This document shows positions 31,550 to 45,721 of a stretch of 64,000 nucleotides of DNA, one piece after another. The DNA comes from Phallusia mammillata (Eukaryota). A program made the translations under genes and the position numbers. Within the stretch, counting starts at the first letter, position 1, and every line of letters begins with the position of its first letter. The DNA lies in assembly GCA_965637545.1 (NCBI GenBank), contig OZ281500.1:10354001-10418000 (forward strand), in the 5' to 3' direction. Under the pieces are notes generated by a model. That model had not been told where the DNA came from. It searched no databases and saw nothing but the letters and a program-made list of their open reading frames with translations.

Positions 31550-33045
31550 CTTCTGCGTGAAAACGATTTTGTGCTTGCTTAGGGAGGCAACACTGTTTAA
31601 CAATTTTTCGCGGTATTGTTTTGTCCTTTCATTGCCACCGACGTTGCGCAATTAAATACCGTTCTTGCGCTCCTACGAAACGACCCCGAAACGAAAAGGT
31701 AAAAGCATTTTGCAACTATAACAAAAGTACACACTGCCTTTTTACTTCATCTAAAATTCAAACAAGCCTAGTTCCAACAATAATAAAATACATAAATTTG
31801 GCCGATTTTAAAGCATAGAACGAAACTATTTCGTTGCGAAAACAACTAGATCTGTATGCTGTAAAATGGGACAATCTTACTTTTTCCTCACAAGTTTTAT
31901 TCGTAAATCATTTTCATTAGGAATTCACTATTTATTGAAGACAATGTCGATGAACAATACACAGTATTTTTCATAGAAAACACAACGGCATTCGATAAAG
32001 TATTAATGGCGGTTCGAACAAGGTTTCATTAAAATACGGTAACACGACATAGCAGTGGCGCAACAGAGAGAACAAATCACCAAACAATATTTCAACACAT
32101 GGACGAGATTAAACCACTTACGCGAACTTCAGAACGTCGCAAAAAAACTAGTGGACCGATATTTTACCAGTAAATAGGTATTAATTTATTTTAAAACTTG
32201 TTGTGGCGTAAAAATAAAATTGCACATTTTGTAGATAACATTATTGTATCCGAGTAACTATATAACTGGAACGATTAAAATGTTAAATAAAAACAGAAGT
32301 ATACACAACAGGTGGACACAAGAGCTTTGGTTTCTGAAGCTATACTTTACTAAGTTCTAAAACTCACATATCATACCAATGACAAATGCTTTTTCGTTTA
32401 AACGTCAATGAGTTTGGTTTGTATGCAGCGACCGATATAGTATAACAACTGGTAAAAACGGAAACGACATCATAATTGTTACACGAAACCACAACGATAT
32501 AAATATTTTACCGGTTATCGGGTATGTGGGTACAGAAAAATAATATGACAATTTTTATTTCACGCGAGAATCGCCACGTGATGTACTGTTCTCTCGAGCG
32601 ACCTCTAGGAATTGCATAATCTTGCTGCGTTGATCAACTTCAGATTGGTGTTTCCTATGTCAGCTGGCTTGCGACAATCGAGATGATTATAATGAGAAGG
32701 ATGACGCAGCAAATGATCATGCATATTTTCTTCTGCAAATTTGCATCAAAAACAATGTTATAACATACAAAGACCTGTGGCGCCTCCTAATGGCTAAAAT
32801 AATAATTTTAGTAATTCACTACAAATATTATCAACGTGATTATGATAAAAAACTAACATTCACAATAGCATGCCTTTCGTTTTATACACAAAACGAAATA
32901 CACTAACATTTACGTACCTGTGTGTCTACTTGCTAAGGTCAAGTACATAACATAGATGCAACGAACAAAGAACGTCAACGACAACTTCACGATACAAGGC
33001 TAAGGGTGAAAAAGGCACAAAATACAACATTGCAAAAAACGGAAC
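31550..33045 (-). other. Candidate non-coding spliced exons (32918-33045 and 31550-31672) downstream of the syntaxin coding exons
   Basis: Both have a pyrimidine-rich AG acceptor (TTTCTTACAG, TCGTTTCGTAG) and a strong donor (CAG|GTACGT, AAG|GTGAGT); the 31550-31672 exon has stops in all three frames. Confidence 0.5.
32655..32732 (-). CDS. Syntaxin transmembrane exon C ([25 protein letters not shown])
   Basis: TTTGCAG acceptor, phase 0; KK + 23 mostly hydrophobic residues with the IICC motif of syntaxin-1, then TAG. Confidence 0.85.
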   Translation of the reverse strand, partial: KKICMIICCVILLIIIISIVASQLT

Positions 33046-36000
33046 CTGTAAGAAACTAAAACTGGCATGTAGCAAACTAAAAATCACTTTCGATCACATT
33101 ATTTGGCAAATACTATCGCCTATCACTTTATAATTTAAAACGAAAATCCGGACACCAACAAATATTCTACAACAGTATACAAGTTTTTCTTTTAGTCCTT
33201 CAGTTTTAAGTAATATTCCAACATGGAATAGTTGAATATAAAACACACTTAATTTTTGGACATTTTCCACGAGAGAATTTTCCATGTGAAAACAAGGTTT
33301 TACGAAGTTTGCGTGACAGCCACGACAACTGCAATGATGACAATAACGACCACCAGTATGGCGCATAGGATGACGAGACAAATCTTCTTCTGTAAAAAAG
33401 TAATTTCTCTGCGAAATTGTAACGACCCAAAAGTTAATTGACCACATTAACAACGTAATTTTCCCACATAAAACAATAGATTAACTTGTAATTGACTGCA
33501 GAATTAGCGTTTTAGGATAAATCCATGCAGATTTTATAAATTTATTGACTAATCATTATGCGAGTTATATGGGGCTGAACGATTATTTAAAATGCACACA
33601 ACGATCTTTAACAAACATCAATTAATCGAAGCAAGATTTTAACATGATTGGGAACATGCAATTGAAACCGATTGGACACAAAAAGCCGTTGTCAGAAGGC
33701 ATTCAATTATTAACATCCGTCGCAAATGAGCAAATTATTATTTTTTGTTTGTTAAACTTATCATGCGTACCAATCCAATATTCAGTTTGTAAATGTGCTG
33801 GATATATGAAAATGTTTGAAAAGAAACGATTGGACCAACAAAATGGCCAAACATCGTGGCTTGGTTTTAACTTGATAGTATCGGCTTTACCTGTATTGCT
33901 GTGAGAAAATTAGAAACCGTCTTGTATGCACATCATGTTGTTGGCCTACTTTGCATATCGACCAGTTAAATAGCTGGATCGAAGTCACTTAATGCCAAGG
34001 ACGTAGCCTACTTGTACGAGCCGATAGCTAAATGAATTTCTCAAAAAATATCACATCAGTTTGTCGCCATATTTCAGTGATAATGCATTGCTTGATAATT
34101 TTTTTACATGTTAGTGCTGTTCGTTTGTTGTCACTATCTGTGGCAAGAAAATCTAAAAGCGTCTTGTGCTAAGCTATACAAACTGCCTGAGCAATGGAGT
34201 TATTCCGTTTGGATTAGAGTTGCAAGCAGGTCCGAAATTCGAGATCGACCCCGTAACTATGAGCCAAATGCCTTACCAAAACCAGATTGGTTTTTAAGAA
34301 AGCATGTTTAGGCCCAAAAGTTTTGACAGACCTATAATAAAGTGACATTCACAATGATCTAGGCCTACACAAGAAGTTTTACTGCTGTCGGGCGTTAGGA
34401 ACTAGCTACCATGCTCGGTAATTTATATTGAAAAAAAATTAAGGACACAGAATGTAAAAGTCAGGCACGAATGAAGCCAGATTCTTTTAAAAACAAATCT
34501 CGAACCAGGCCCGAATGACAACCACTCGATTTTAAACATTCAAGGAAGGACATTTTTTAACTGACTCAGACGGGAAACTTGGGTCTCAACCAACTTCCAT
34601 CAAACAGAAATCGCGCGCACAATACATCCCATTCATATTGCTAAGTTCCCATTCATATTGCTAAGTTTCACTTCCTATTAGATGATTAGTCATGCACTGC
34701 CACGACGCGAATCTAATAGGACCTTCATCGATCGTGGAGAATGAGATACGCGAATTTTGGAAATAAGCAACAGCTGCGGAAAAGCCACGTTTGCAAAGGC
34801 GATTGATTGCGCGGCAAGAACAGGGTTTCAAGTGCCCGGCCCGTATTGGATATGCGTCCAGTGATTACTTGAGGTCGATACTCTTACGACGCCGGTAGTA
34901 AACATGATTGTGACGTCACAATGGTTTTTAACTGCCCCAACTCGAATCACATTACGCCATTGTTTAATACCATCAATCGTGGTGACCTTTTTGAACAGTT
35001 TTTAACTTCTATTCACGTCGATTGTAGGGGTAAAGCAGAATAATAAAATGCTTTACCAATCATACCAGAAACTCTCCTTTATTGACCGTAAACGTATTTG
35101 ACAAAAATACTTCAGATGGTGCATACACGTTTCGTGAATATCTTTTCCGTTTGTTGGTCCTAATGCAAAGTCTTTGCGTAGGAGTCCAAACTGCCACATC
35201 GCTTAATTTCTCACTTAAACAATTCGTTGGCCGTAGTCGTTGACAACAGAAGCAAACTGATTTTTGAGTGAAACAGATGACGACAAAAAAAAACTAGCCA
35301 CTGTCTTAGACAACAGGCTTCGTAAAATAGTTTTTGTGTCTAAAAGGCGTTAATATGGCACGCAACCACACGGTAGCCTACGCACGACGTCATATAAGCA
35401 TGACGCATTCTTACAGAAACCGGTTGCGTCACAGACAGCATCACACAACGTAGTTTCTTGTAATGTAATGCGATGTTGCGTTACAGAATCGACAACAAAC
35501 ATTAAATAAAGAGAACAATAAAGAATTTATGTGCACGTAACATGTGACGTTGTAACGCGTCCGTCAACGCAAAACAGAGAAACGAGCATCGAATAAAACA
35601 CTGCATCCGTTATTCCATGCGTAAACTTGGAAGGTCGTCATTATGTTAAGGCACACAAGTCATGCAATACAGGCTTAGTAACTGTTGCATTACGAACATA
35701 TCTATCGCATATGACCTGTTTGTGGCCTGTCAGCTAATCGATGCGACCCTCCACAAAATTAGCGGCTGGTTTACGAACACACGGCTATTTGGAGTTCTAA
35801 TAAATCATTTTACCATTGATTTTTCTGACGGATGTGGAAATTCTTTCTTGTCAAAGCGACCGCCGTAGTTTGGTATTGGCTATGTAGCGGCGTTTCGCAT
35901 GATTTACACAAATCGCAGGACAATGTTGTTTAATATAATCAGTGGACAAAACTTGGTTCTTTCTTGCGATGTGTTATCCGAGGCGAAAAGGATTTACAAA

Positions 36001-39000
36001 TTACAGGGACGATTCATATTTCTAAACAATTGAAATGTGACATATTGGTGTAATCGTTGCGAACATTCAAAAGTTTCCACGTGTTACAGTGCTCTCCGCT
36101 TAGATGGAAGTGCTTACAACTGGTTAAGTCAAGCAAAATGGAAAGGGTAGAAACTATACGTAGTTGTACATATATTAGTCGATACATACATTATTGCTAA
36201 CACGACTTTTGCCGTAGCGCTGCGTTTTGTGATCTGCGTAAAAGTTGGGTTTACAGAACAAAAACAATTCATTTGGAATGGGTTCTCCGCCTAAAAAATT
36301 GCTTTTTCGGTACCAAAGTTGATAAACAATCAGCCGATGATACCAATACTTACAAGCAAATGCTTAACAATGTAAAATTGCCTATAAATACAATAAATTG
36401 CAGTAACAGGGTCATGCTGTTAAGTGAATTAATCTACATGAAGCACAACAATATGGGTTCAGTATGATTAAGCTGTACACTTTTCGATCACTCCGTCAAA
36501 GGAAAATCTTTCATTTTTATGTTTGGGTTTTTTGGACGGAATATTATTTCGAAAATACACACAATGAAAAGACTAGCAAAGCACAAAATAATTGCAGTAA
36601 CCGAAGTTGGGTTAGGCAACAGAAAATCAAACCGATAAAAAAGGCGAATCAAGGCACAAAACAAGTCGGTGGTCTCAGGCGCAAGTGCATAACGATGTAC
36701 ATGAAATAAACGTTGAAGAAAGATATCGGGAGTGTATGCCAAAGTTCAAATATATATGCAACTTAGCAAGATCCAACAAATGCATTCAAAGTCATTACGG
36801 TTTATTGTACAATAGGCCAGATCTTAGATTGACAATACTGCTAACATTTGAAAGCGGTTGCTTGTTTCTCAGGTTATCTAGTCCAAAGTGACATATGGTC
36901 TGCAGTCGCATAAGTTTGGTCTTTGAATATTTGGAAATTGGCAATTACTCCGGTCCTTGGTATGTAGTGCGATATAGCTCTTTCAATAGTTCAGGCGAAA
37001 TGCAAAAACAGCCAACCCACAATAGAATACTGCTTTAACATTGCGCTTCGTTCATACGATAGAATAGAAATCAAAAACAAACAAAGAGTTAAATCAAGTG
37101 TGTGACCAAAGGAAGAGGAATCGTCACAATCAATATTTTTCAATATATTTTTGATTGGTTTAAGTGACTACAACGCTGCTTGAATGGACTTCGGCTGTTC
37201 CGGGATCCCACATCTACAGAAACAACAAAATAATGGTAAAATGGGTAAAAAAGCTTAATAGCCTGGAGACCTGTAAGTTGAAACAAGGATTGTTTAGTCG
37301 GATGGTATATACTAGGGTTCGACTTGAACTTTTGAGATAATACTAGGATGCCGACTCGGGTTCCTAGAAACATTTCTTCGATTCCTACTCCTCACGGTGC
37401 CCATTTCGGTTTATAAGTTACAAATTTTAATACATTTATCATTTGGCGTTGGCAAGGGTGCCTGTTTTGAAGCTTATTTATAGACCTGTCGTCAGTTTTA
37501 TATAGGGGCAATTTTGCAATGCGTTCGTAAGAACATCGTGTATTGGAGTGTAAGCATTGAAATGCGATGATTTTTTTCAAGTGTATGTAATGTAAATAAA
37601 TTATGGGTAAACAACTTACCAGACGAACATAATGGGATCACCAATCTTACCATACGTAGGGTTAGAAAAAGTATACGGCAGTGTAACTTAATACCTTTAA
37701 ACTGGATAACGCCAAAAGAATACTATTGCATGACCCGTGCTAAGTGTTTAGAACAGTGGTTTTCAACCATAAAGGACACGTAGAACCACTATATGTTATG
37801 TAGATTTTCACCAGACATTAGAAATTGGCACAATCTTTTTTTTAATTTTTGATAGAAGCTCCGGTCAAGAGCCGCTGGTTTAAGAACAAGGCAAATCTTT
37901 AATGTAAGGTAATCGCTTTCGATGCTTGCTGTAAATAATTTAAAGTGGAAATTCGCGTAGTACTAAGGTCCGCGAAAGATAGTTTGTTTTAACTGGCTTT
38001 GTACGTCCCTAAACATGGCAGTGATGGACACCGTGGTTCGATCGGCAGTTTGAGAAGGGGACAGCTTGAATTCGCGCACTCGGTTGTGCGGTTGACGCCA
38101 TGGCACTCTTTGCTCTGTTCGTCTACTTTCCATCCATTAAATATTCATGCAAAGATTGCATTACGCTCAATACAAACTGATTACACCGAGGGGCGGTTAT
38201 GGCTAGTTGCAACTTGCCGCTGTAAGTTTTCAGTAACTTTACTTGGGGAGAAAAATTATCTGTTTTGTTAGAAATAATATCAGCTAATACCAAAGTTTTA
38301 AAATATCGAAAGGGACCTGCTACCCAAATCACATTAAGCTATTTAATATTAATAAGTGGGTAATCACGAAATGGCAAAAGCATGAATCACACAACGTTGC
38401 GCAGTATCCCCAAGAGCCGCGACAACACCACTGTTGAGGAAACCGACAAGAAATAACGCACTTTAAAACAAGATACAAAGTGAAAACAAATTATAGCGGC
38501 GTAATCCTAATCTACAGACGATTGCATTTTGAAAAATCGTGCCAAAATCGGTCCAAACATAAAAAATTGGAAAATTTAAAATAAAAGAGCTTACTTTCCA
38601 CCACGCGTAATAATAATAATAGTTTTGTTTTTATGGATGCAACACATTTACTAGTAAAGCCTTAAGTTTATTGATTCATCTCTGGAATCCAATATTGTTG
38701 CCGACACTAAGGTATTATGACATATAGCATTTACATAAAAGGAAAAAGGGCCGTAATAATTTCCTAATGTTACGTAATTACCAGCACGAATTCCAATTGT
38801 ACCTATTCTGGGTTGGTTTATCCCTGTTTAAAAGGTCGCACTTCTACAACAGAGCACAATGTGATGTGGTGCGCTTTGTATAAAGTATGGGGGCTTTGAA
38901 CCGGAGATTTGGTTTGCAAATGAGGTAGCTGTGACGTAGCCACTCGGCAGCTATGACCTAGCCGACGATATGCTTAATATACCATCTTATGCTAAAGCAG

Positions 39001-42000
39001 TAATCGATACGTGGCACAAGCTCCCACGACCGCGTTAAACATGAAAGACAATACAATTCTGTCTTCCACATAAGCACATTGGTATAATTGATCTTAGGTT
39101 GCGCTGTTCTATATTCTCACGCATCAACACAAAAGTCTTACCTTTGCATGTAGGCGAGGTGGTGGTGTTTAGCCTTTAGGAACACTGACCCCAATAATAA
39201 TTCCAATAATAGCCAAAATAACAATAACAAGAACAATGATGATGATTTTTTTCTGTTGATAAAATATAAATAAATTCTTCTGATTCCGTCACAAATATAC
39301 ATTGCAAAGTAAAAACAAAAGTCACATTATTATACATCAAACCTTTAATATTGCAACACAGCTGTTCAATAATTAACTACCTGTTACTGATGGATTTGAA
39401 CAGTCACTTACTGCATATTAAAAAACATATGAGTAAACCTATCTGTCACTTCTCTGCCACAAGCAACTGAACAACAGTTCTTACTGTAAACTACCTTGCC
39501 ACCTAACTGAATGTCTTAAAGTAAGATAACAGTGTGTTCTAATAGAAAGGAATCTTTCCGAAGTATAATTCATGGGTTTAATGCTAAAAACTTGCTAAAA
39601 AAACCTGGTTGGTACACAACAAGAAACAGCATCATCCAGTCAAACAATCGAAAAAATAAAACACACAACCAGCGTTACCCAAAAAACATTTCAGTCTAAT
39701 AAGTTAAAGCTAATCTCCTGCAGCAATCAAACTAGGCCTACCATATTTCCATCCCCCAAAAGGAGGACACATTGTAAAAAAATCATGAAAAAAATACTTT
39801 AAAGACCCCTAAAAAATAAAAGCCTAAAAAATTAAACGGTAAAATCAAAAGTTTAACATTTATTACAAGACTAAAATAAGCTTATATTTTCAATAAATGT
39901 AAAATCCACTTGTATTCTTTAAAAAATCAGCCGAAGATGCATATTTGGCTGTTTTTAAAAGCATAATTGTCACATATGTATTTGGTAAACCAGAAATTCT
40001 TTTAAAAGGAGGACATTTGGGCACTTTTTCTTGTTCTCGGAGGACAACTTGTTTTTTGTTAAAAAGGAGGACATGTCCTCCAAAAAGAGGACGTATGGTA
40101 GGCCTAATCAAACAAACCAAACAAAAACTTTTTTAAACATTTTTTGGTACTGAACAACCAGATTATTTTTTAGTGTACACGTTTGAAGATTATAAACCTC
40201 CCAAACTATGCACAGCATGTGTTTACAAAAATTTTTGAACTAAAAATTAGCCAACCTTTTTCTAAATGAGTCACAAAACCAAGGTTACAAAGGCTAACTT
40301 TAACATTGCTGTTGGGAATACAAAAAAAAAAAAACAGATTAGCACTTTTGCTCCAATTTACATGACCTACAGATTTTAAACAATGTTTAAGTACAGGTTT
40401 AGAATATTTTCTAGGTACTGCTTTCAAACAATGTGGGAAAAAACCGGGAAAAACCAGGAAAAGCCAGTTGATCCTACTTAGTCCAAACAATCCTTGTTTG
40501 CCAAAGATGAAAATCATTTGAAGCTTTTTAACACACAGAATCAACTTTAGACACTAAAAACCGGATTTTGAATTGGTACAAAGTGATAAAAGACAGCATG
40601 CACACAGCACAAGCAGGCAGACATAGTGAACATGACAAGTGGTTACCACAGACACAAACAGGCCTACCACACATCGACAGTGCAAGATGACACAGACATA
40701 TAGCGTGCTGTCTTACCCTTCTTGCTTTGCTTTGGTACTTGACAGCTTTCTTGGTATCTGACACTGCACGCTCGACATAGCCGACTGAGTGTTCAACATT
40801 GTACTCTATTCTGTCGATCATTTCGCCCTTTTTGGGCACAACAAACATACAAAAAAACATTAGAAACTTCGTACCTTGCGCGCTTTGCTTTGATATAAAA
40901 CAGCCTTTTTAGTTTCTTGTTTGGCAGTTTCTATGTAACCCTGGGCATTGGTGACATTGTATTCAATCTGGTTTACCATTTCACCCTAAAATAAAAAAAT
41001 GTGATTAGTTATTTGTTAAATATGAAGGTTTTGTAACACTGTGTACATTAAATTGTAAAATTCTGTAGATGCCATTGACATTACAGCTGAAGATTTTACT
41101 GTTAAAATATATATACATTATTTATAAATGAAAGTAAACAAACACAATCACATTTGCAGACGACACCAAACACAAAGTACTTTATATTTTACTTTTAAAC
41201 TCAGCATGCATTGTGGGCTTAATCAAATTAATGATGAGTATTTAACCAACAATATGATAATAATTGTCATTGGTTTGAATTGACAATTTTATTCCACAAG
41301 AATTTACTGACAACATCAAAATACCACATTTGATTTACCTTAAAACATACTGTCGGTACAACAGCATGTATTGTGTTTCGTCGCCACATGTTATGCATTT
41401 TAAAACACAAAAATCAAGTTAAACACTGGTTTGGACATTGAAAAACCGACTAATGTTTTGGAGCATGTCGAAAGACAAATTAACAGCAAAGCAACTTGGG
41501 TTTTTAAATTTTCCAAGTGAATAAAACTTATGAACAAAAAGTAACACTAAGTTGCAAAACAAAACAAAGCAAAAAAAGGTATGTATCCAAAAAAGGATAC
41601 ATAGTAAAAATAACATTTAAAATCTTAACAAAAAAGGAAATAAATGAAAACATTGAAAAAACATAGTAGTTTGGTAAGCAGACATTTTTTATAAAAGTAT
41701 TTAAAGAAGTCATAGAGTTGTTTTAGCAAAATACTCAACAGTCTTATATATATATGTTCTTTAACATAGTGGGATTTGATGAATGTATTACAGTAAGGCA
41801 ACAAAAGAAAAACGAAAATAGTTTACCTGCTGTTCAACTAACATGGCCATGTCCATAAACATGTCATGTAATTCACGGATACTGCTTTCAAGTTTAATGA
41901 TGTCATTGTGTCTTGCTTCAATATCATTAAGAGCCTGTTTTGTTTGCTGAGTGTCCATGATAATCTGCAAATATGTATTGTTTTTACCAAGTCTTGCCAA

Positions 42001-45000
42001 TTTTTATGAAAAGGTCAAGGGTCACCAATAAAAAGGTTAAAAATAAACAACCAATTTTACCATGTACATGTTAGACTCATTCCCTATCATGCACATTACC
42101 ATGTTTATCATGTTGCATCAGAAGCATATGGAGAGCAATATGAATGACACCCCACAATACCACTGATTACAAATCAGACAATGTATTATATCATTTCCTA
42201 TTTTGCGGCATGGAACACAGCACAAGTAACTGTCGAAAGTATGACTAACCGATGATGTGAAAATGGCAGGACTGCCATCTTTACTGTTTTCCAGCATGTC
42301 CTCAAGTTCATTGTCAGACACCTGACGTCCAGTAATTTCAAGCTGCCTCTGTATTCTGGCTTTGCATCTTTCTCGGTAGTCATTTTGTGTTGTGTTATAC
42401 TCTGTCATCACAGCAATAAACTTCCGCGACAAAGTGGAGTGCTAAAAGTTGTTAGAACTATTTAGTCACCTTCAAGTCAAAACACATTTTAACTTTATTA
42501 TTACTTTTATCAAATATCTATATTGCATAATGGTGTTTGTTATTATATTGCAAGTCCCAGAAAGTCTACCTTGTTAGATAGAAATATACATTAGAAAATT
42601 TTAAATGTAAATGATGGCAAGCATATAGTGCACATATTTGAAGCAAAATGTCTTGTAAGCAAATAGTTGGAAATCCCAGACAAAATCACAAATGGAAAAC
42701 ATAAATATTTCTTGCACTGTTGCCCACATCGATTTTGTCAGGTACTTTGTATGTAAATTATTTGCTGAAGACTTGTTTCACCTGTGTTTTCTGTATTCTT
42801 TCATCAGCTTGTGGTAGGTTGGGATTTTCTTCAAAGTCTTTCTGGATTAATTTTAGCTTTGCCCTTACTTTGTTGGCATTTTGTTTGATATCAGCCATGC
42901 ATGCTTCCATTTCTTCTTTGGTTTCTGTAAGTGCACCATGACATTAGAAAATCCTTTTTGAGTATGTGTATTACACAGTAAAAGGTCAATAGATATTTAT
43001 AGTATTTTGCCTGGTTAGTTAATAAAAAAGTCAAACAATTTTAGTTGGTTGGTAAAGTAAAACAAACTGCAATCATGCTATGTAGGACAGAAAGTATGTA
43101 TTGATTAGTTTGAATTACTTTTGGCAGGGCAAAATTGGAACAAGACAGTTGGCCTAAAAAGCTTTTTCAAGGACAATAGTCATAGTTTGCCCTACTTGCA
43201 GCAGTCATAAATAATTCACTGGTCATGGTAAGTCTGGGTGCAGAAGATACGCTGCCGCCCATAAAACCACAAAGCATATGTTGCAAGAGTTTTGGTGTAA
43301 TGCTGTACCTTGGACAGATAAAATGTTGCCTGCTTTGCATCAAAATATTTCTTGTATTTGGGTTTACCGAAGGGCGTGTGCTTATTTACAGTGGGTTTAG
43401 AATAGATCTTCCATTCCTTATCATTCCACGGCGTTTGTTCAAGTCGCCAAGCATTTAGCTTTCAAATCATGTCCAAAAGGCGCAACTGAACCCGCCCGTT
43501 CTGATAATATTTGCATCAGGCGCAAAGAGAACTAGAGAGGATAAAAGAAACAAACGAAGAGGGAGCGACTGCTTACGCGTAGAGGATAATCGGTAAACAT
43601 ACGATAATACGTCACAATGAAGAAGGCCGATTGGAAAGGTATATAAGCGCCGTGGACAGAAAAGGGCGGAGAATACTTTGGCTGTCACAATTACTTTGAG
43701 CGCATTTAAACATAAATTTTTCACGTTTAAAAAAACAAAATATGATAAGCGGACGATAATAGACCAAAGTCAAAGTTGCTAAGTATTTTGTAGTTGGCCA
43801 AATGTTGCGTCCGTTTTCCTTAATGTTCAAAAAAACAACAGACGCGAAAAATCAATATAACCACCATAGAAACCACGCGAAAAGATCCATACACTTCCCA
43901 TAGCAGGCAGATATTGCACCGCACCAGTTTAATGGTGACTTGTAATTTCCCTTTAGTCAATACACGGGGCCCAGGCACAAGAGGCACAGGGGAATAAAGT
44001 CACTACCAGAATAAAAAAGGGAGGTAATTAAAGTTAATGAGAACAGGGCCACAATGAAATTCAGTGCAAATGCAACGAATAAAATATTAATGTTCTAATA
44101 GAAATTAAAGTTAATTTTATATCATGTAGCCAACATTAAATTATTTCTGAAAGTATGAGTGTAAATTAGAAACATGGTGAAAAAGTTATGGCATATTGAT
44201 TGTAAATCAACTCAGTTTGTTTAAAGGCACTGTTTGAAAGCATAGTAAAATTTTTTTATACTAGCGGCACATCAATAAACTATTTAGCCAAGAAAAATGT
44301 AACTTACTGTCATCAGCTTGAGGTGCTGACAGTATATCACTCTGTTTAACTTTCACTTCTTGAACTTTGGTTGAAATTGTGTCGATGTAGCTACGAATTT
44401 CATCCACCTATCAAACAATGTATTCAAAATGACAAAAATTGTACTTTTCCAAACAAACAGTTATGTAGGATTCATAAGGACATTTGATAGACAAATATTC
44501 ATTAATAAGGACGGTGACACATGAAATGTAACAAACTGATACATTTCTTGTGTGTGGTTGTGTATAGATCATGTGAGAAATATATTGCTATTAATCCAAC
44601 ATACACACCCTGTTAATAAGCCTTCTGTTATTATTATTATTATTATTATTTTATGTAAAGAGCATAAACAATTCACTTTTGACTAACCAGCAGAGCACTC
44701 AACCATTACCTGGATGAAAAAATCTTTCATGTTATCAGGTTCAACAGTGACAGAAACAGCATCATCATCTTCATCATCTATTGTCCCACTTCTCCCCTAA
44801 AACAGAATCTTCACTTTAACACCATAGATTTACACATTTAATTAATACGTAGTAAATCAAAATTGCCCAAAAGTCCATAAACTAAAATGCAGAAGTTAGG
44901 AGATGTTAGTAATATGGCAAATAACATAATTAAAAATTTCCCTTGCAGAACTAAAAATTCTATTATAAGACATTAGATTTTCAAACAATTGCACACCTAA

Positions 45001-45721
45001 CCAGCAAGGAGTGTTTTCTTACAAAAATTGCATGTAAAAGTTGCTCTAAATTATCACCATGACAAGATAAACAATTTGTTATAAAATTGTTAAATTTGTA
45101 GCAGAGTAGATTTTAATTATATATTGTCTAAACCAGGGATGTCCAACAAGTGGCATGGATGCCAAAAGTGGCACGCAGAGCATTTGAAAATGGCACACAG
45201 GCTATTGAAAATTCAGATGGTAAACATTAGGATTTGTCCCGCAATTAAATTTGTTTCTGTTGATTCTTCTTGGCTTTTATTCTAACTTCAGTAAAGATTA
45301 CCAGTAGTAAAGTTACACAACCCACTAATTAATTTGTTTGTTTGTTGTTTGCAAAACTTAAGACCCATTGCAAACTATTTGTATCTTGTGTCGCTTAAAC
45401 ATAATAAAAGGTTTTTGGAGTATCATAAACTGAGCCTGTATCGTCAAGACGTTTAAGAAAGGGTTTGGAAAAAGTACCAAACATTGGCACGCGAAAGTAT
45501 TTTAAAACTAAATTTGGCATGGCGGTGTTTGAGTTGGGCACCACTGGTTTAATCCATTTTTGAGTGATATGTATGTTTTTAAACAAAAATAAAATACAAT
45601 CCTCCTCCTTAAAATACAGAAAAGGTTAACGCAGGAAGTGTAATAACTCATTAAAAAAAACAAAATAAAAAAGGTACATTTCAATACTTACAGTTTTCAA
45701 ATCTGCTAGGCGATCCCTCAT
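32655..45721 (-). CDS. STX1A: Syntaxin-1-like plasma-membrane Qa-SNARE with alternative C-terminal exons
   Basis: Exons 45692-45721 ([10 protein letters not shown]), 44710-44796, 44308-44407, 42782-42924, 42250-42441 (HSTLSRKF...QRQLEITGR), 41827-41964 ([32 protein letters not shown]), then 40875-40985 or 40717-40827 ([13 protein letters not shown]...[11 protein letters not shown]), then a TM exon at 39169-39252, 33300-33389 or 32655-32732. Phases are consistent. Confidence 0.95.
33300..33389 (-). CDS. Syntaxin transmembrane exon B ([29 protein letters not shown])
   Basis: TTTTTTACAG acceptor, phase 0; KK + hydrophobic helix + TAA. Confidence 0.85.
   Translation of the reverse strand, partial: KKICLVILCAILVVVIVIIAVVVAVTQTS
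37754..37877. mobile_element. Old degenerate hAT-type MITE remnant, 124 bp
   Basis: CAGTGGTTTTCAACC / GGTCAAGAGCCGCTG imperfect TIR; flanks GTTTAGAA / GTTTAAGA. Confidence 0.5.
39169..39252 (-). CDS. Syntaxin transmembrane exon A ([27 protein letters not shown])
   Basis: CAACAG acceptor, phase 0; Cys-free hydrophobic helix; TAA at 39169-39171; AAG|GTAAGA donor 27 nt after the stop (exon boundary 39142). Confidence 0.88.
   Translation of the reverse strand, partial: KKIIIIVLVIVILAIIGIIIGVSVPKG
39733..40106. mobile_element. hAT (Blackjack-like termini) MITE, 374 bp, in a syntaxin intron
   Basis: 13-bp TIR TAGGCCTACCATA / TATGGTAGGCCTA; ATCAAAC duplicated on both flanks; repeated GGAGGAC subterminal motif. 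Confidence 0.82.
40717..40827 (-). CDS. Syntaxin SNARE C-half exon, copy B (canonical STX1-type)
   Basis: 111 nt, phase 0-0, [37 protein letters not shown]; weak CCCAAAAAG acceptor, GTAAGA donor. Confidence 0.92.
40875..40985 (-). CDS. Syntaxin SNARE C-half exon, copy A (divergent)
   Basis: 111 nt, phase 0-0, [37 protein letters not shown]; TTTTAG acceptor, GTACGA donor. Confidence 0.9.
45134..45546. mobile_element. Internally deleted copy of the hAT MITE family at 50182-51132, in syntaxin intron 1
   Basis: Ends CAGGGATGTCCAAC / GTTGGGCACCACTG; shares GCCAAAAGTGGCACGCAGAGCATTTGAAAATGGCAC and right-end sequence with the 50182 copy; flanks GTCTAAAC / GTTTAATC. Confidence 0.8.

What the first reader, a model, noticed from the sequence alone, without database searches (positions are those of the whole stretch)
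32655..40985. Combinatorial syntaxin: 2 SNARE C-halves x 3 transmembrane anchors from one gene
Seen: two paralogous 111-nt exons (divergent [27 protein letters not shown] vs canonical [27 protein letters not shown]) and three alternative terminal TM exons with 0, 2 and 3 cysteines (A, B, C), allowing up to six proteins. Established: vertebrates use separate STX1/2/3/4 genes; STX3A/3B differ in the same SNARE C-half plus TM region; TM cysteines of syntaxin-1 are palmitoylated. Inference: one locus may produce both a neuronal STX1-like form (copy B + TM-C) and general or epithelial secretory forms (copy A + TM-A), replacing gene duplication with exon duplication.
Basis: partly seen in the sequence, partly recalled or inferred. 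Interest (0 to 1): 0.8.

Follow-up and report, generated by a model that had tools for sequence, protein, structure and literature searches.

The report
Sea-squirt syntaxin with swappable tail exons
A sea-squirt gene for the membrane-fusion protein syntaxin makes a nerve-type and a general-type protein by swapping two tail exons, a layout already annotated in related sea squirts and apparently the ancestor of the separate vertebrate syntaxin 1, 2 and 3 genes.

Summary
A minus-strand syntaxin gene (start codon at 45721, last stop at 32655) has two tandem 111-nt exons, A and B. Each encodes syntaxin-1A residues 227-263, the SNARE C-half. Three terminal exons each encode KK plus a membrane anchor, with 0, 2 and 3 cysteines.

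Spliced RNA contigs from four runs show A or B, never both. They link A to TM-A (plus a separate 3'UTR exon) and B to TM-C. TM-B could not be tested in this species, and no other combination was seen, so "six proteins" is unproven.

The layout is not new. RefSeq lists the same isoforms for Ciona, Styela and Clavelina, and the exon order is conserved in those genomes. Amphioxus has 2 x 4 annotated isoforms.

An exon tree puts tunicate A exons with vertebrate STX2 and STX3A (support 100/99). B is 35/37 identical to STX1A. TM-A resembles the STX2/STX3A anchors and TM-C resembles the STX1 anchor.

The likely reading is a pre-duplication STX1/2/3 gene whose splice forms vertebrates later divided among paralogues. 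Exon duplication did not replace gene duplication.

Conserved GCAUG motifs downstream of B suggest Rbfox-type neuronal control. The 47-nt A-B spacer is not conserved. I rate interest as moderate.

The parts
45692..45721 (-). Exon 1 coding part, [10 protein letters not shown] (start codon at 45721), followed by a GTAAGT donor
   Evidence: The N-terminus matches MRDRL... of the tunicate syntaxins. Not covered by the laid RNA contigs.
44710..44796 (-). Exon 2 (87 nt), acidic linker ...[23 protein letters not shown]
   Evidence: Sequence and splice sites. Homology to tunicate proteins.
44308..44407 (-). Exon 3 (100 nt), start of Habc ([33 protein letters not shown])
   Evidence: Its 3' end is the loose end joined to 42924 in all four runs.
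42782..42924 (-). Exon 4 (143 nt)
   Evidence: Joint 42782/42441 in four runs. Translation.
42250..42441 (-). Exon 5 (192 nt), Habc/linker
   Evidence: Joints. Pfam Syntaxin PF00804 at 60.6 bits.
41827..41964 (-). Exon 6 (138 nt), N-terminal half of the SNARE motif. It ends ...MLVEQQ, at the position of syntaxin-1A Q226, the zero layer.
   Evidence: Numbering comes from the alignment of exon B to residues 227-263.
40875..40985 (-). Exon 7A (111 nt), STX2/STX3A-type SNARE C-half, with a strong acceptor
   Evidence: Joined to exon 6 in all four runs and to TM-A in three. Pfam SNARE 41.3 bits. Groups with STX2/STX3A at 100/99.
40828..40874 (-). 47-nt intron between A and B. It was never seen spliced out. 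Unspliced contigs run through it.
   Evidence: The same intron is 93-300 nt in relatives.
40717..40827 (-). Exon 7B (111 nt), STX1-type SNARE C-half, with a weak purine-rich acceptor
   Evidence: Joined directly to exon 6 (skipping A) and to TM-C in run X5. 35/37 identical to syntaxin-1A 227-263.
40596..40601 (-). UGCAUG motif 115 nt downstream of exon B, a candidate Rbfox enhancer, within a GU-rich stretch
   Evidence: GCAUG lies within 200 nt downstream of exon B in all five tunicate loci. None of 20000 random draws reached this.
39142..39252 (-). TM-A exon (111 nt, internal): [27 protein letters not shown], stop at 39171-39169, then a donor
   Evidence: Joints 40875/39252 and 39142/37213 in runs X1, X5 and X17. 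15-16 identities to the STX3A and STX2 anchors.
35452..37213 (-). 3'UTR exon of the A/TM-A mRNA. The lower end is a minimum, taken from contig lengths.
   Evidence: Contig records 1, 5 and 8 extend 640-1550 nt beyond 37000.
33300..33389 (-). TM-B exon: [29 protein letters not shown] plus stop. Predicted only.
   Evidence: Acceptor and ORF. An exon at the same position is used in Styela X1 and Ciona X2. No RNA test in this species.
32655..32732 (-). TM-C exon: [25 protein letters not shown] plus stop. The CC pair aligns with syntaxin-1A C271/C272.
   Evidence: The X5 loose end at 40717 is the reverse complement of this exon's first 30 nt. The contig carries 761 nt beyond exon B, so the 3'UTR reaches about 31970.

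Best explanation
This is the single sea-squirt pro-orthologue of vertebrate syntaxin 1, 2 and 3, a plasma-membrane Qa-SNARE. Exons 1-6 are shared. They encode the N-peptide, the Habc domain and the SNARE motif up to the zero-layer glutamine.

Splicing then takes either exon 7A or exon 7B, which encode layers +1 to +8 plus the first half of the polybasic linker. It finishes with one of several anchor exons.

Two mRNAs are shown:
- 7A + TM-A + a separate 3'UTR exon. This is a syntaxin-2/3A-like form and probably the default or general secretory form.
- 7B + TM-C. This is a syntaxin-1-like form with the CC palmitoylation pair and is probably neuronal.

A third mRNA, 7A + TM-B, is inferred from relatives.

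Inferred mechanism: exon 7A has a strong acceptor and is the default. Exon 7B has a weak acceptor and needs activation, probably by Rbfox-type factors binding the conserved GCAUG just downstream. In this species the 47-nt spacing may also keep A and B from being spliced to each other.

The A/B split and the anchor classes predate the tunicate-vertebrate divergence. After the vertebrate genome duplications, STX1 kept B/TM-C, STX2 kept A with two anchors, and STX3 kept both sets.
For: Gene model and junctions:
- All joints are GT-AG.
- Exon 6 is joined to A in four runs and to B in one.
- A is joined to TM-A and then to the UTR exon in three runs.
- B is joined to TM-C through the loose-end match.
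- No contig joins A to B.

Exon identity:
- B is 35/37 identical to syntaxin-1A 227-263.
- A and B both pass the Pfam SNARE cut-off.

Relatives:
- RefSeq isoforms of Styela, Ciona and Clavelina show the same A or B choice and anchor sets.
- The genomic order A, B, TM-A, TM-B, TM-C is conserved.

Orthology:
- A region search with Clavelina A + TM-A found vertebrate syntaxin-2 (72-79% identity) and syntaxin-3 (69%) as the best non-tunicate hits.
- In the exon tree, tunicate A + STX2 + STX3A + the extra exon of fish STX1A form one branch at 100/99. B sits with STX1 and the invertebrate exons.
- TM-A has 15-17 identities to the STX2a and STX3A anchors, against 8 to STX1.
- The literature says STX3A and 3B differ in exactly this half plus the anchor, and that 3B is the more STX1-like (PMC11476516, PMC8263458).

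Regulation:
- The acceptor of B is weak in all five tunicates.
- GCAUG lies within 200 nt downstream of B in all five, 8 sites in total. None of 20000 random draws reached this.
Against: - TM-B use is untested in this species, and its sequence is not specifically like the STX2b anchor.
- Contigs drop rare variants, so other pairings cannot be excluded. Ciona X2 is B + a TM-B-like anchor, and one C. savignyi model is B + TM-A.
- The tissues of the runs are unknown, so 'neuronal' versus 'general' rests on homology only.
- The exon tree uses 37 columns, and functional convergence of the A type cannot be fully excluded.
- No STX3B or STX4 sequence was in hand.
- The steric role of the 47-nt intron is doubtful as a general mechanism. 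The intron is 93-99 nt in three relatives and 300 nt in Styela, yet no model there includes both exons. The minimum intron size of this species was not measured.
- Rbfox binding is inferred from motifs alone.
Confidence: 0.72

Rival explanations
1. Free combinatorial splicing: the A/B choice and the anchor choice are independent, so the gene makes up to six proteins.
For: All six reading frames are open. RefSeq lists all 2 x 4 combinations for amphioxus. Ciona X2 is B + a TM-B-like anchor and C. savignyi has a B + TM-A model.
Against: In run X5 the contigs run from A into TM-A and from B into TM-C without a branch. In the other runs the only other continuation from A's donor is unspliced intron. 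Transcript-derived tunicate proteins pair A with TM-A or TM-B types and B with the TM-C type. Predicted isoform sets may be built from single junctions.
Confidence: 0.15
2. TM-B is an unused relic in this species, so only two proteins are made.
For: There is no RNA evidence for TM-B here. Its sequence is less like the Styela and STX2b anchors than those are to each other. No TM-B was detected in Clavelina.
Against: The frame is intact, with a KK start, a 27-residue hydrophobic run, a stop and a good acceptor. Exons at the same position are used in Styela X1 and Ciona X2.
Confidence: 0.2
3. Tunicates and vertebrates duplicated the SNARE C-half exon independently, and the A type looks like STX2/3A through convergence on a non-neuronal function.
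For: The exon has been duplicated repeatedly. Amphioxus has two near-identical copies, and arthropod and mollusc gene models carry two tandem copies. The tree rests on only 37 columns.
Against: The joint A-type branch has 100/99 support. The linked anchor TM-A is also STX2/3A-like. The order is A before B both in tunicates and in fish STX1A models that carry an A-like exon.
Confidence: 0.1

Closest known systems
Vertebrate STX3 with its splice forms 3A and 3B (exons 9A/10A/11A versus 9B/10B/11B)
   Same: Exons 1-8 are shared. [quoted passage not shown] One form is epithelial and the other is syntaxin-1-like and neuronal (PMC11476516, PMC8263458). The window's A, TM-A and UTR exons mirror 9A, 10A and 11A. 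Exon A groups with STX3A.
   Different: Here it is the only STX1/2/3-type gene seen, the B form is 35/37 identical to STX1A itself, and there is a third anchor exon. No STX3B sequence was compared directly.
RefSeq isoforms of the orthologous gene in Ciona intestinalis (X1-X4), Styela clava (X1-X3) and Clavelina lepadiformis (X1, X2)
   Same: The same A or B exon, the same anchor classes and the same genomic order. The downstream neighbour is a VWD/TIL/C8 mucin gene in Ciona and Clavelina. Scan notes place a mucin gene in this window too.
   Different: The A-B intron is 93-300 nt there, not 47. Ciona has two TM-A copies. Styela's A isoform uses the TM-B-type anchor. No paper describing these isoforms was found.
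C. elegans unc-64 (forms A and B) and vertebrate STX2 alternative anchors
   Same: Alternative last coding exons change only the membrane anchor. In the worm one form is neuronal and is selected by the CELF protein UNC-75 (PMC4946901).
   Different: unc-64 does not swap the SNARE half. The control element proposed here is GCAUG (Rbfox type). The GU-rich stretch beside it is seen in this species only.
Amphioxus syntaxin, isoforms X1-X8
   Same: Two alternative 37-residue SNARE C-half exons and four anchor exons in one gene.
   Different: The two amphioxus exons differ by only three residues, and both are of the ancestral B-like type. This looks like a separate or homogenised duplication.
SNAP-25 exons 5a/5b
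   Same: A tandem duplicated, mutually exclusive exon within a SNARE partner of syntaxin (PMC2581893).
   Different: It is a different protein, and no anchor choice is coupled to it.

Membership tests
Plasma-membrane syntaxin (Qa-SNARE, syntaxin 1/2/3 group) | Syntaxin N-terminal (Habc) domain | tested here: met
   Pfam PF00804 at 60.6 bits on exon 5 alone, against a cut-off of 26.7.
Plasma-membrane syntaxin (Qa-SNARE, syntaxin 1/2/3 group) | SNARE motif with a glutamine at the zero layer | tested here: met
   Exons A and B hit PF05739 at 41.3 and 52.9 bits. Both align to syntaxin-1A 227-263, so the last Q of exon 6 (...VEQQ) falls at position 226.
Plasma-membrane syntaxin (Qa-SNARE, syntaxin 1/2/3 group) | Polybasic juxtamembrane stretch followed by a single C-terminal anchor | tested here: met
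   KAR[KR] + KK + a hydrophobic run of 21-25 residues + a stop, in all three anchor exons.
Plasma-membrane syntaxin (Qa-SNARE, syntaxin 1/2/3 group) | N-peptide of the Munc18-binding type (M-x-DR-x...L) | tested here: met
   Exon 1 encodes [10 protein letters not shown]. That this peptide binds Munc18 is general knowledge and was not tested.
Mutually exclusive exon pair | Adjacent homologous exons of equal length and phase | tested here: met
   111 and 111 nt, phase 0, 62% residue identity.
Mutually exclusive exon pair | Mature RNA carries one exon or the other, never both or neither | tested here: met
   Exon 6 joins A and exon 6 joins B, with no A-to-B joint, in four runs. No RefSeq tunicate isoform has both. 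Limit: contigs can miss rare forms.
Mutually exclusive exon pair | A mechanism that enforces exclusion, either steric (intron too short) or competing RNA pairing | tested here: inconclusive
   The intron is 47 nt here but 93-300 nt in relatives. Pairing of B's donor with the upstream intron occurs only in this species (z -3.6) and is not conserved.
STX3A/3B-type dual C-terminus | One alternative set is of the syntaxin-2/3A type and the other of the syntaxin-1 type | tested here: met
   The comparison with STX3B itself rests on the literature (PMC11476516).
Alternative terminal anchor exons (unc-64 / STX2 type) | Each anchor exon is used in mRNA | tested here: inconclusive
   TM-A and TM-C are used. 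TM-B lay outside the one stretch that could be laid.

The most novel reading that the evidence does not exclude
The last common ancestor of tunicates and vertebrates had one syntaxin gene that already made a neuronal form (B + CC anchor) and epithelial or general forms (A + TM-A or TM-B) by coupled alternative splicing. The vertebrate genome duplications then turned these splice forms into the separate STX1, STX2 and STX3 genes, with STX3 (and relic exons in fish STX1A) still showing the old layout. On this reading the neuronal/non-neuronal division of exocytic syntaxins began as a splicing decision. The sea squirt would be a living model for how two splice choices 8 kb apart are coupled.
Probability: 0.6. 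Interest if true: 0.55.

Novelty: new member of a known kind. Interest (0 to 1): 0.45.

Why it matters
This gives a clean case of splice forms being turned into paralogues for a core synaptic protein. It predicts which residues separate neuronal from general exocytic syntaxins: the surface of layers +1 to +8 and the anchor. It also offers a simple chordate in which both forms come from one locus and can be removed one exon at a time. For genome annotation, it shows that gene models holding both 111-nt exons in tandem are probably errors.

Tried and rejected
- **Docking or selector RNA pairing.** Inverted repeats link the upstream intron to the 3' ends of A and B. Duplex energies are unusual only for B in this species (z -3.6) and near zero in four relatives, so I dropped it as a general mechanism.
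- **Steric exclusion as the conserved mechanism.** The spacer is 93-300 nt in relatives. I kept it only as a possible species-specific aid.
- **First alignment of the window's exons to a scaffold protein (A1).** Several pieces were misplaced. A reduced one (A2) was used for the search.
- **Locus L004.** It ends before its A and B exons. L001 and L002 are single-exon contigs.
- **Look-ups that returned nothing.** Those for P0165, P0354 and P0384 found no record, and the sturgeon STX1A gene was too long to return DNA. Amphioxus and fish exon order therefore rests on protein models.
- **Literature.** Six searches found STX3A/B, unc-64, STX2 and SNAP-25 work but nothing on tunicate or amphioxus syntaxin isoforms, or on the splice-form-to-paralogue idea. 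A search for ascidian minimum intron size gave nothing usable.
- **Not done.** I did not count other Qa-SNARE genes in this genome, because no tool searches it.
Full report
**What is there**

The gene lies on the minus strand. Earlier scan notes on this window say the genome is a sea squirt's, and the protein matches agree with that.

Reading the strand directly together with spliced RNA contigs gives this model:

| Exon | Coordinates | Content |
|---|---|---|
| 1 | 45721-45692 | [10 protein letters not shown] |
| 2 | 44796-44710 | acidic linker |
| 3 | 44407-44308 | start of Habc |
| 4 | 42924-42782 | |
| 5 | 42441-42250 | Habc/linker |
| 6 | 41964-41827 | N-half of SNARE motif |
| 7A | 40985-40875 | SNARE C-half, A type |
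| 7B | 40827-40717 | SNARE C-half, B type |
| TM-A | 39252-39142 | anchor, stop at 39171-39169 |
| 3'UTR | from 37213 | UTR of the A/TM-A mRNA |
| TM-B | 33389-33300 | anchor, predicted |
| TM-C | 32732-32655 | anchor |

Exons 7A and 7B are both 111 nt and phase 0. They share 23 of 37 residues and are 47 nt apart. Each alone passes Pfam's SNARE threshold, and both align to syntaxin-1A residues 227-263. B is 35/37 identical to it. The swap therefore begins right after the zero-layer glutamine and replaces layers +1 to +8 and half of the polybasic linker.

The three anchor exons encode these peptides:
- TM-A: [27 protein letters not shown]
- TM-B: [29 protein letters not shown]
- TM-C: [25 protein letters not shown]

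A pattern scan of 14 kb found only these three. All six combinations are open frames of 292-296 aa.

**Expression**

All joints have GT-AG ends on the gene's strand, so the contigs derive from RNA.
- Exon 6 is joined to A in all four runs.
- Exon 6 is joined directly to B, skipping A, in run X5.
- A is joined to TM-A, and TM-A to the exon at 37213, in three runs.
- In X5 the contig carrying B continues beyond 40717 with 30 letters that are the reverse complement of the start of TM-C.
- No contig joins A to B.
- In X5 the A contig runs into TM-A and the B contig into TM-C without a branch.
- In the other runs the only other continuation from A's donor is an unspliced contig (40904 down to 40538 or 40502).

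So two mRNAs are shown: A/TM-A and B/TM-C. TM-B lay outside the stretch and is untested. Contigs can hide rare forms.

**Relatives**

A search with exon 5 found single-exon fragments of other tunicates. A profile search then found full-length proteins. Cluster listing and inspection of their C-termini gave the following.

| Species | Isoforms |
|---|---|
| Styela clava | X1 = A + a TM-B-like anchor; X2 = B + TM-C; X3 = B without anchor |
| Ciona intestinalis | X1 and X4 = A + TM-A variants; X3 = B + TM-C; X2 = B + a TM-B-like anchor |
| Clavelina lepadiformis | X1 = A + TM-A; X2 = B + TM-C |
| Unnamed tunicates (transcript-derived proteins) | A with two anchors; B with a TM-C type |

In the genomic loci of Styela, Ciona, Clavelina and one unnamed tunicate, the order A, B, TM-A, (TM-B), TM-C is conserved. 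The A-B intron is 300, 93, 94 and 99 nt respectively.

Amphioxus has two nearly identical SNARE C-half exons and four anchors, annotated as eight isoforms. Hemichordates and echinoderms have one SNARE C-half and two to four anchors. The design is therefore already in public annotation, although I found no paper on it.

**Relation to vertebrate genes**
- A region search with Clavelina's A + TM-A gave vertebrate syntaxin-2 (72-79% identity) and syntaxin-3 (69%) as the best non-tunicate hits.
- A maximum-likelihood tree of the 37-residue exon puts all tunicate A exons, STX2, STX3A and an extra A-like exon found in fish STX1A models on one branch with support 100/99. Tunicate B exons sit with STX1A, STX1B and the invertebrate exons.
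- TM-A shares 15-17 residues with the STX2a and STX3A anchors, against 8 with STX1.
- TM-C is closest to STX1A (13 residues), and its CC pair aligns with C271/C272.
- Styela's TM-B is close to the second STX2 anchor (14-15 residues), but the window's TM-B is not.
- The shared N-terminal 230 residues are 62-66% identical to STX1A/1B, 57-59% to STX2 and 49% to STX3.

[quoted passage not shown] It also states that 3B is the more syntaxin-1-like, and that a soluble form arises by skipping the anchor exon 10A (PMC11476516, PMC8263458).

The simplest reading is that the A/B duplication and the anchor classes existed before tunicates and vertebrates split, and that the vertebrate paralogues later divided them.

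**Mechanism**

*Shown:* A and B are alternative, and A goes with TM-A while B goes with TM-C.

*Inferred:* A is the default. Its acceptor has a long pyrimidine tract, whereas B's acceptor is purine-rich in all five tunicates. GCAUG occurs within 200 nt downstream of B in all five loci, 8 sites in total. None of 20000 random draws of five windows reached that total or had a site in every locus. By the known position rule for Rbfox proteins this predicts activation of B in neurons. That is an inference, not a test.

The 47-nt spacer may block A-to-B splicing here, but it cannot be the general mechanism given the 93-300 nt spacers in relatives. RNA pairing between B's donor and the upstream intron is seen only in this species. 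How the exon 7 choice is coupled to an anchor choice up to 8 kb away is unknown.

**Verdict**

The feature is real and expressed, and it is a new member of a known kind. The title claim of six combinatorial proteins is not supported. Two forms are shown and three are likely. The evolutionary reading is the interesting part and is well but not conclusively supported.

Noticed in passing
window 40502-40904 (minus strand): Unspliced RNA contigs in two runs (depth 5-10 against 25-30 for the exons) run from the last 30 nt of exon A through the 47-nt intron, exon B and about 200 nt beyond. Other introns show no coverage. Read-through of A's donor would give a protein without an anchor, ending ...KARKVRSF. 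Similar read-through or anchor-less forms exist in Ciona (old X1), Styela X3 and tunicate metatranscriptome contigs.
   Followed up: partly
window 39142-39252 and 35452-37213: TM-A is a 111-nt internal exon with its stop inside, spliced to a dedicated 3'UTR exon. This matches the 10A/11A layout of human STX3, where skipping 10A gives a soluble form. No such skipping was seen here.
   Followed up: partly
proteins P0271, P0290, P0310, P0334, P0336, P0063 (fish syntaxin-1A models): These models contain an A-like 37-residue exon directly before the normal B exon, both included. P0048 is a fish syntaxin-1-like protein that uses an A-like exon with its own anchor. This looks like a relic or rarely used A exon in vertebrate STX1A.
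   Followed up: partly
proteins P0174 (barnacle), P0049, P0032, P0061, P0198 (pearl oyster), P0182/P0183 (Anopheles): Gene models of arthropods and a mollusc carry two different SNARE C-half exons in tandem. The same exon therefore seems to have been duplicated, and probably used alternatively, in several bilaterian lineages.
   Followed up: no
L006 26100-27366 and L007 20301-24119, compared with window 1516-28869: In Ciona and Clavelina the gene just downstream of syntaxin is a VWD/TIL/C8 mucin gene. Earlier scan notes place a gel-forming mucin gene at the same side in this window, so the neighbourhood appears conserved.
   Followed up: no
window 41485-41501 and 40715-40731: A 17-nt element in the intron upstream of A is 82% complementary to the 3' end and donor of exon B (duplex -26 kcal/mol, z -3.6 against shuffles). 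No counterpart was found in four other tunicates.
   Followed up: yes
protein P0388 (Branchiostoma lanceolatum 'STX1A', CAH1231296.1): This deposited model includes both alternative SNARE C-half exons one after the other. It is probably an annotation error caused by the tandem exons.
   Followed up: no
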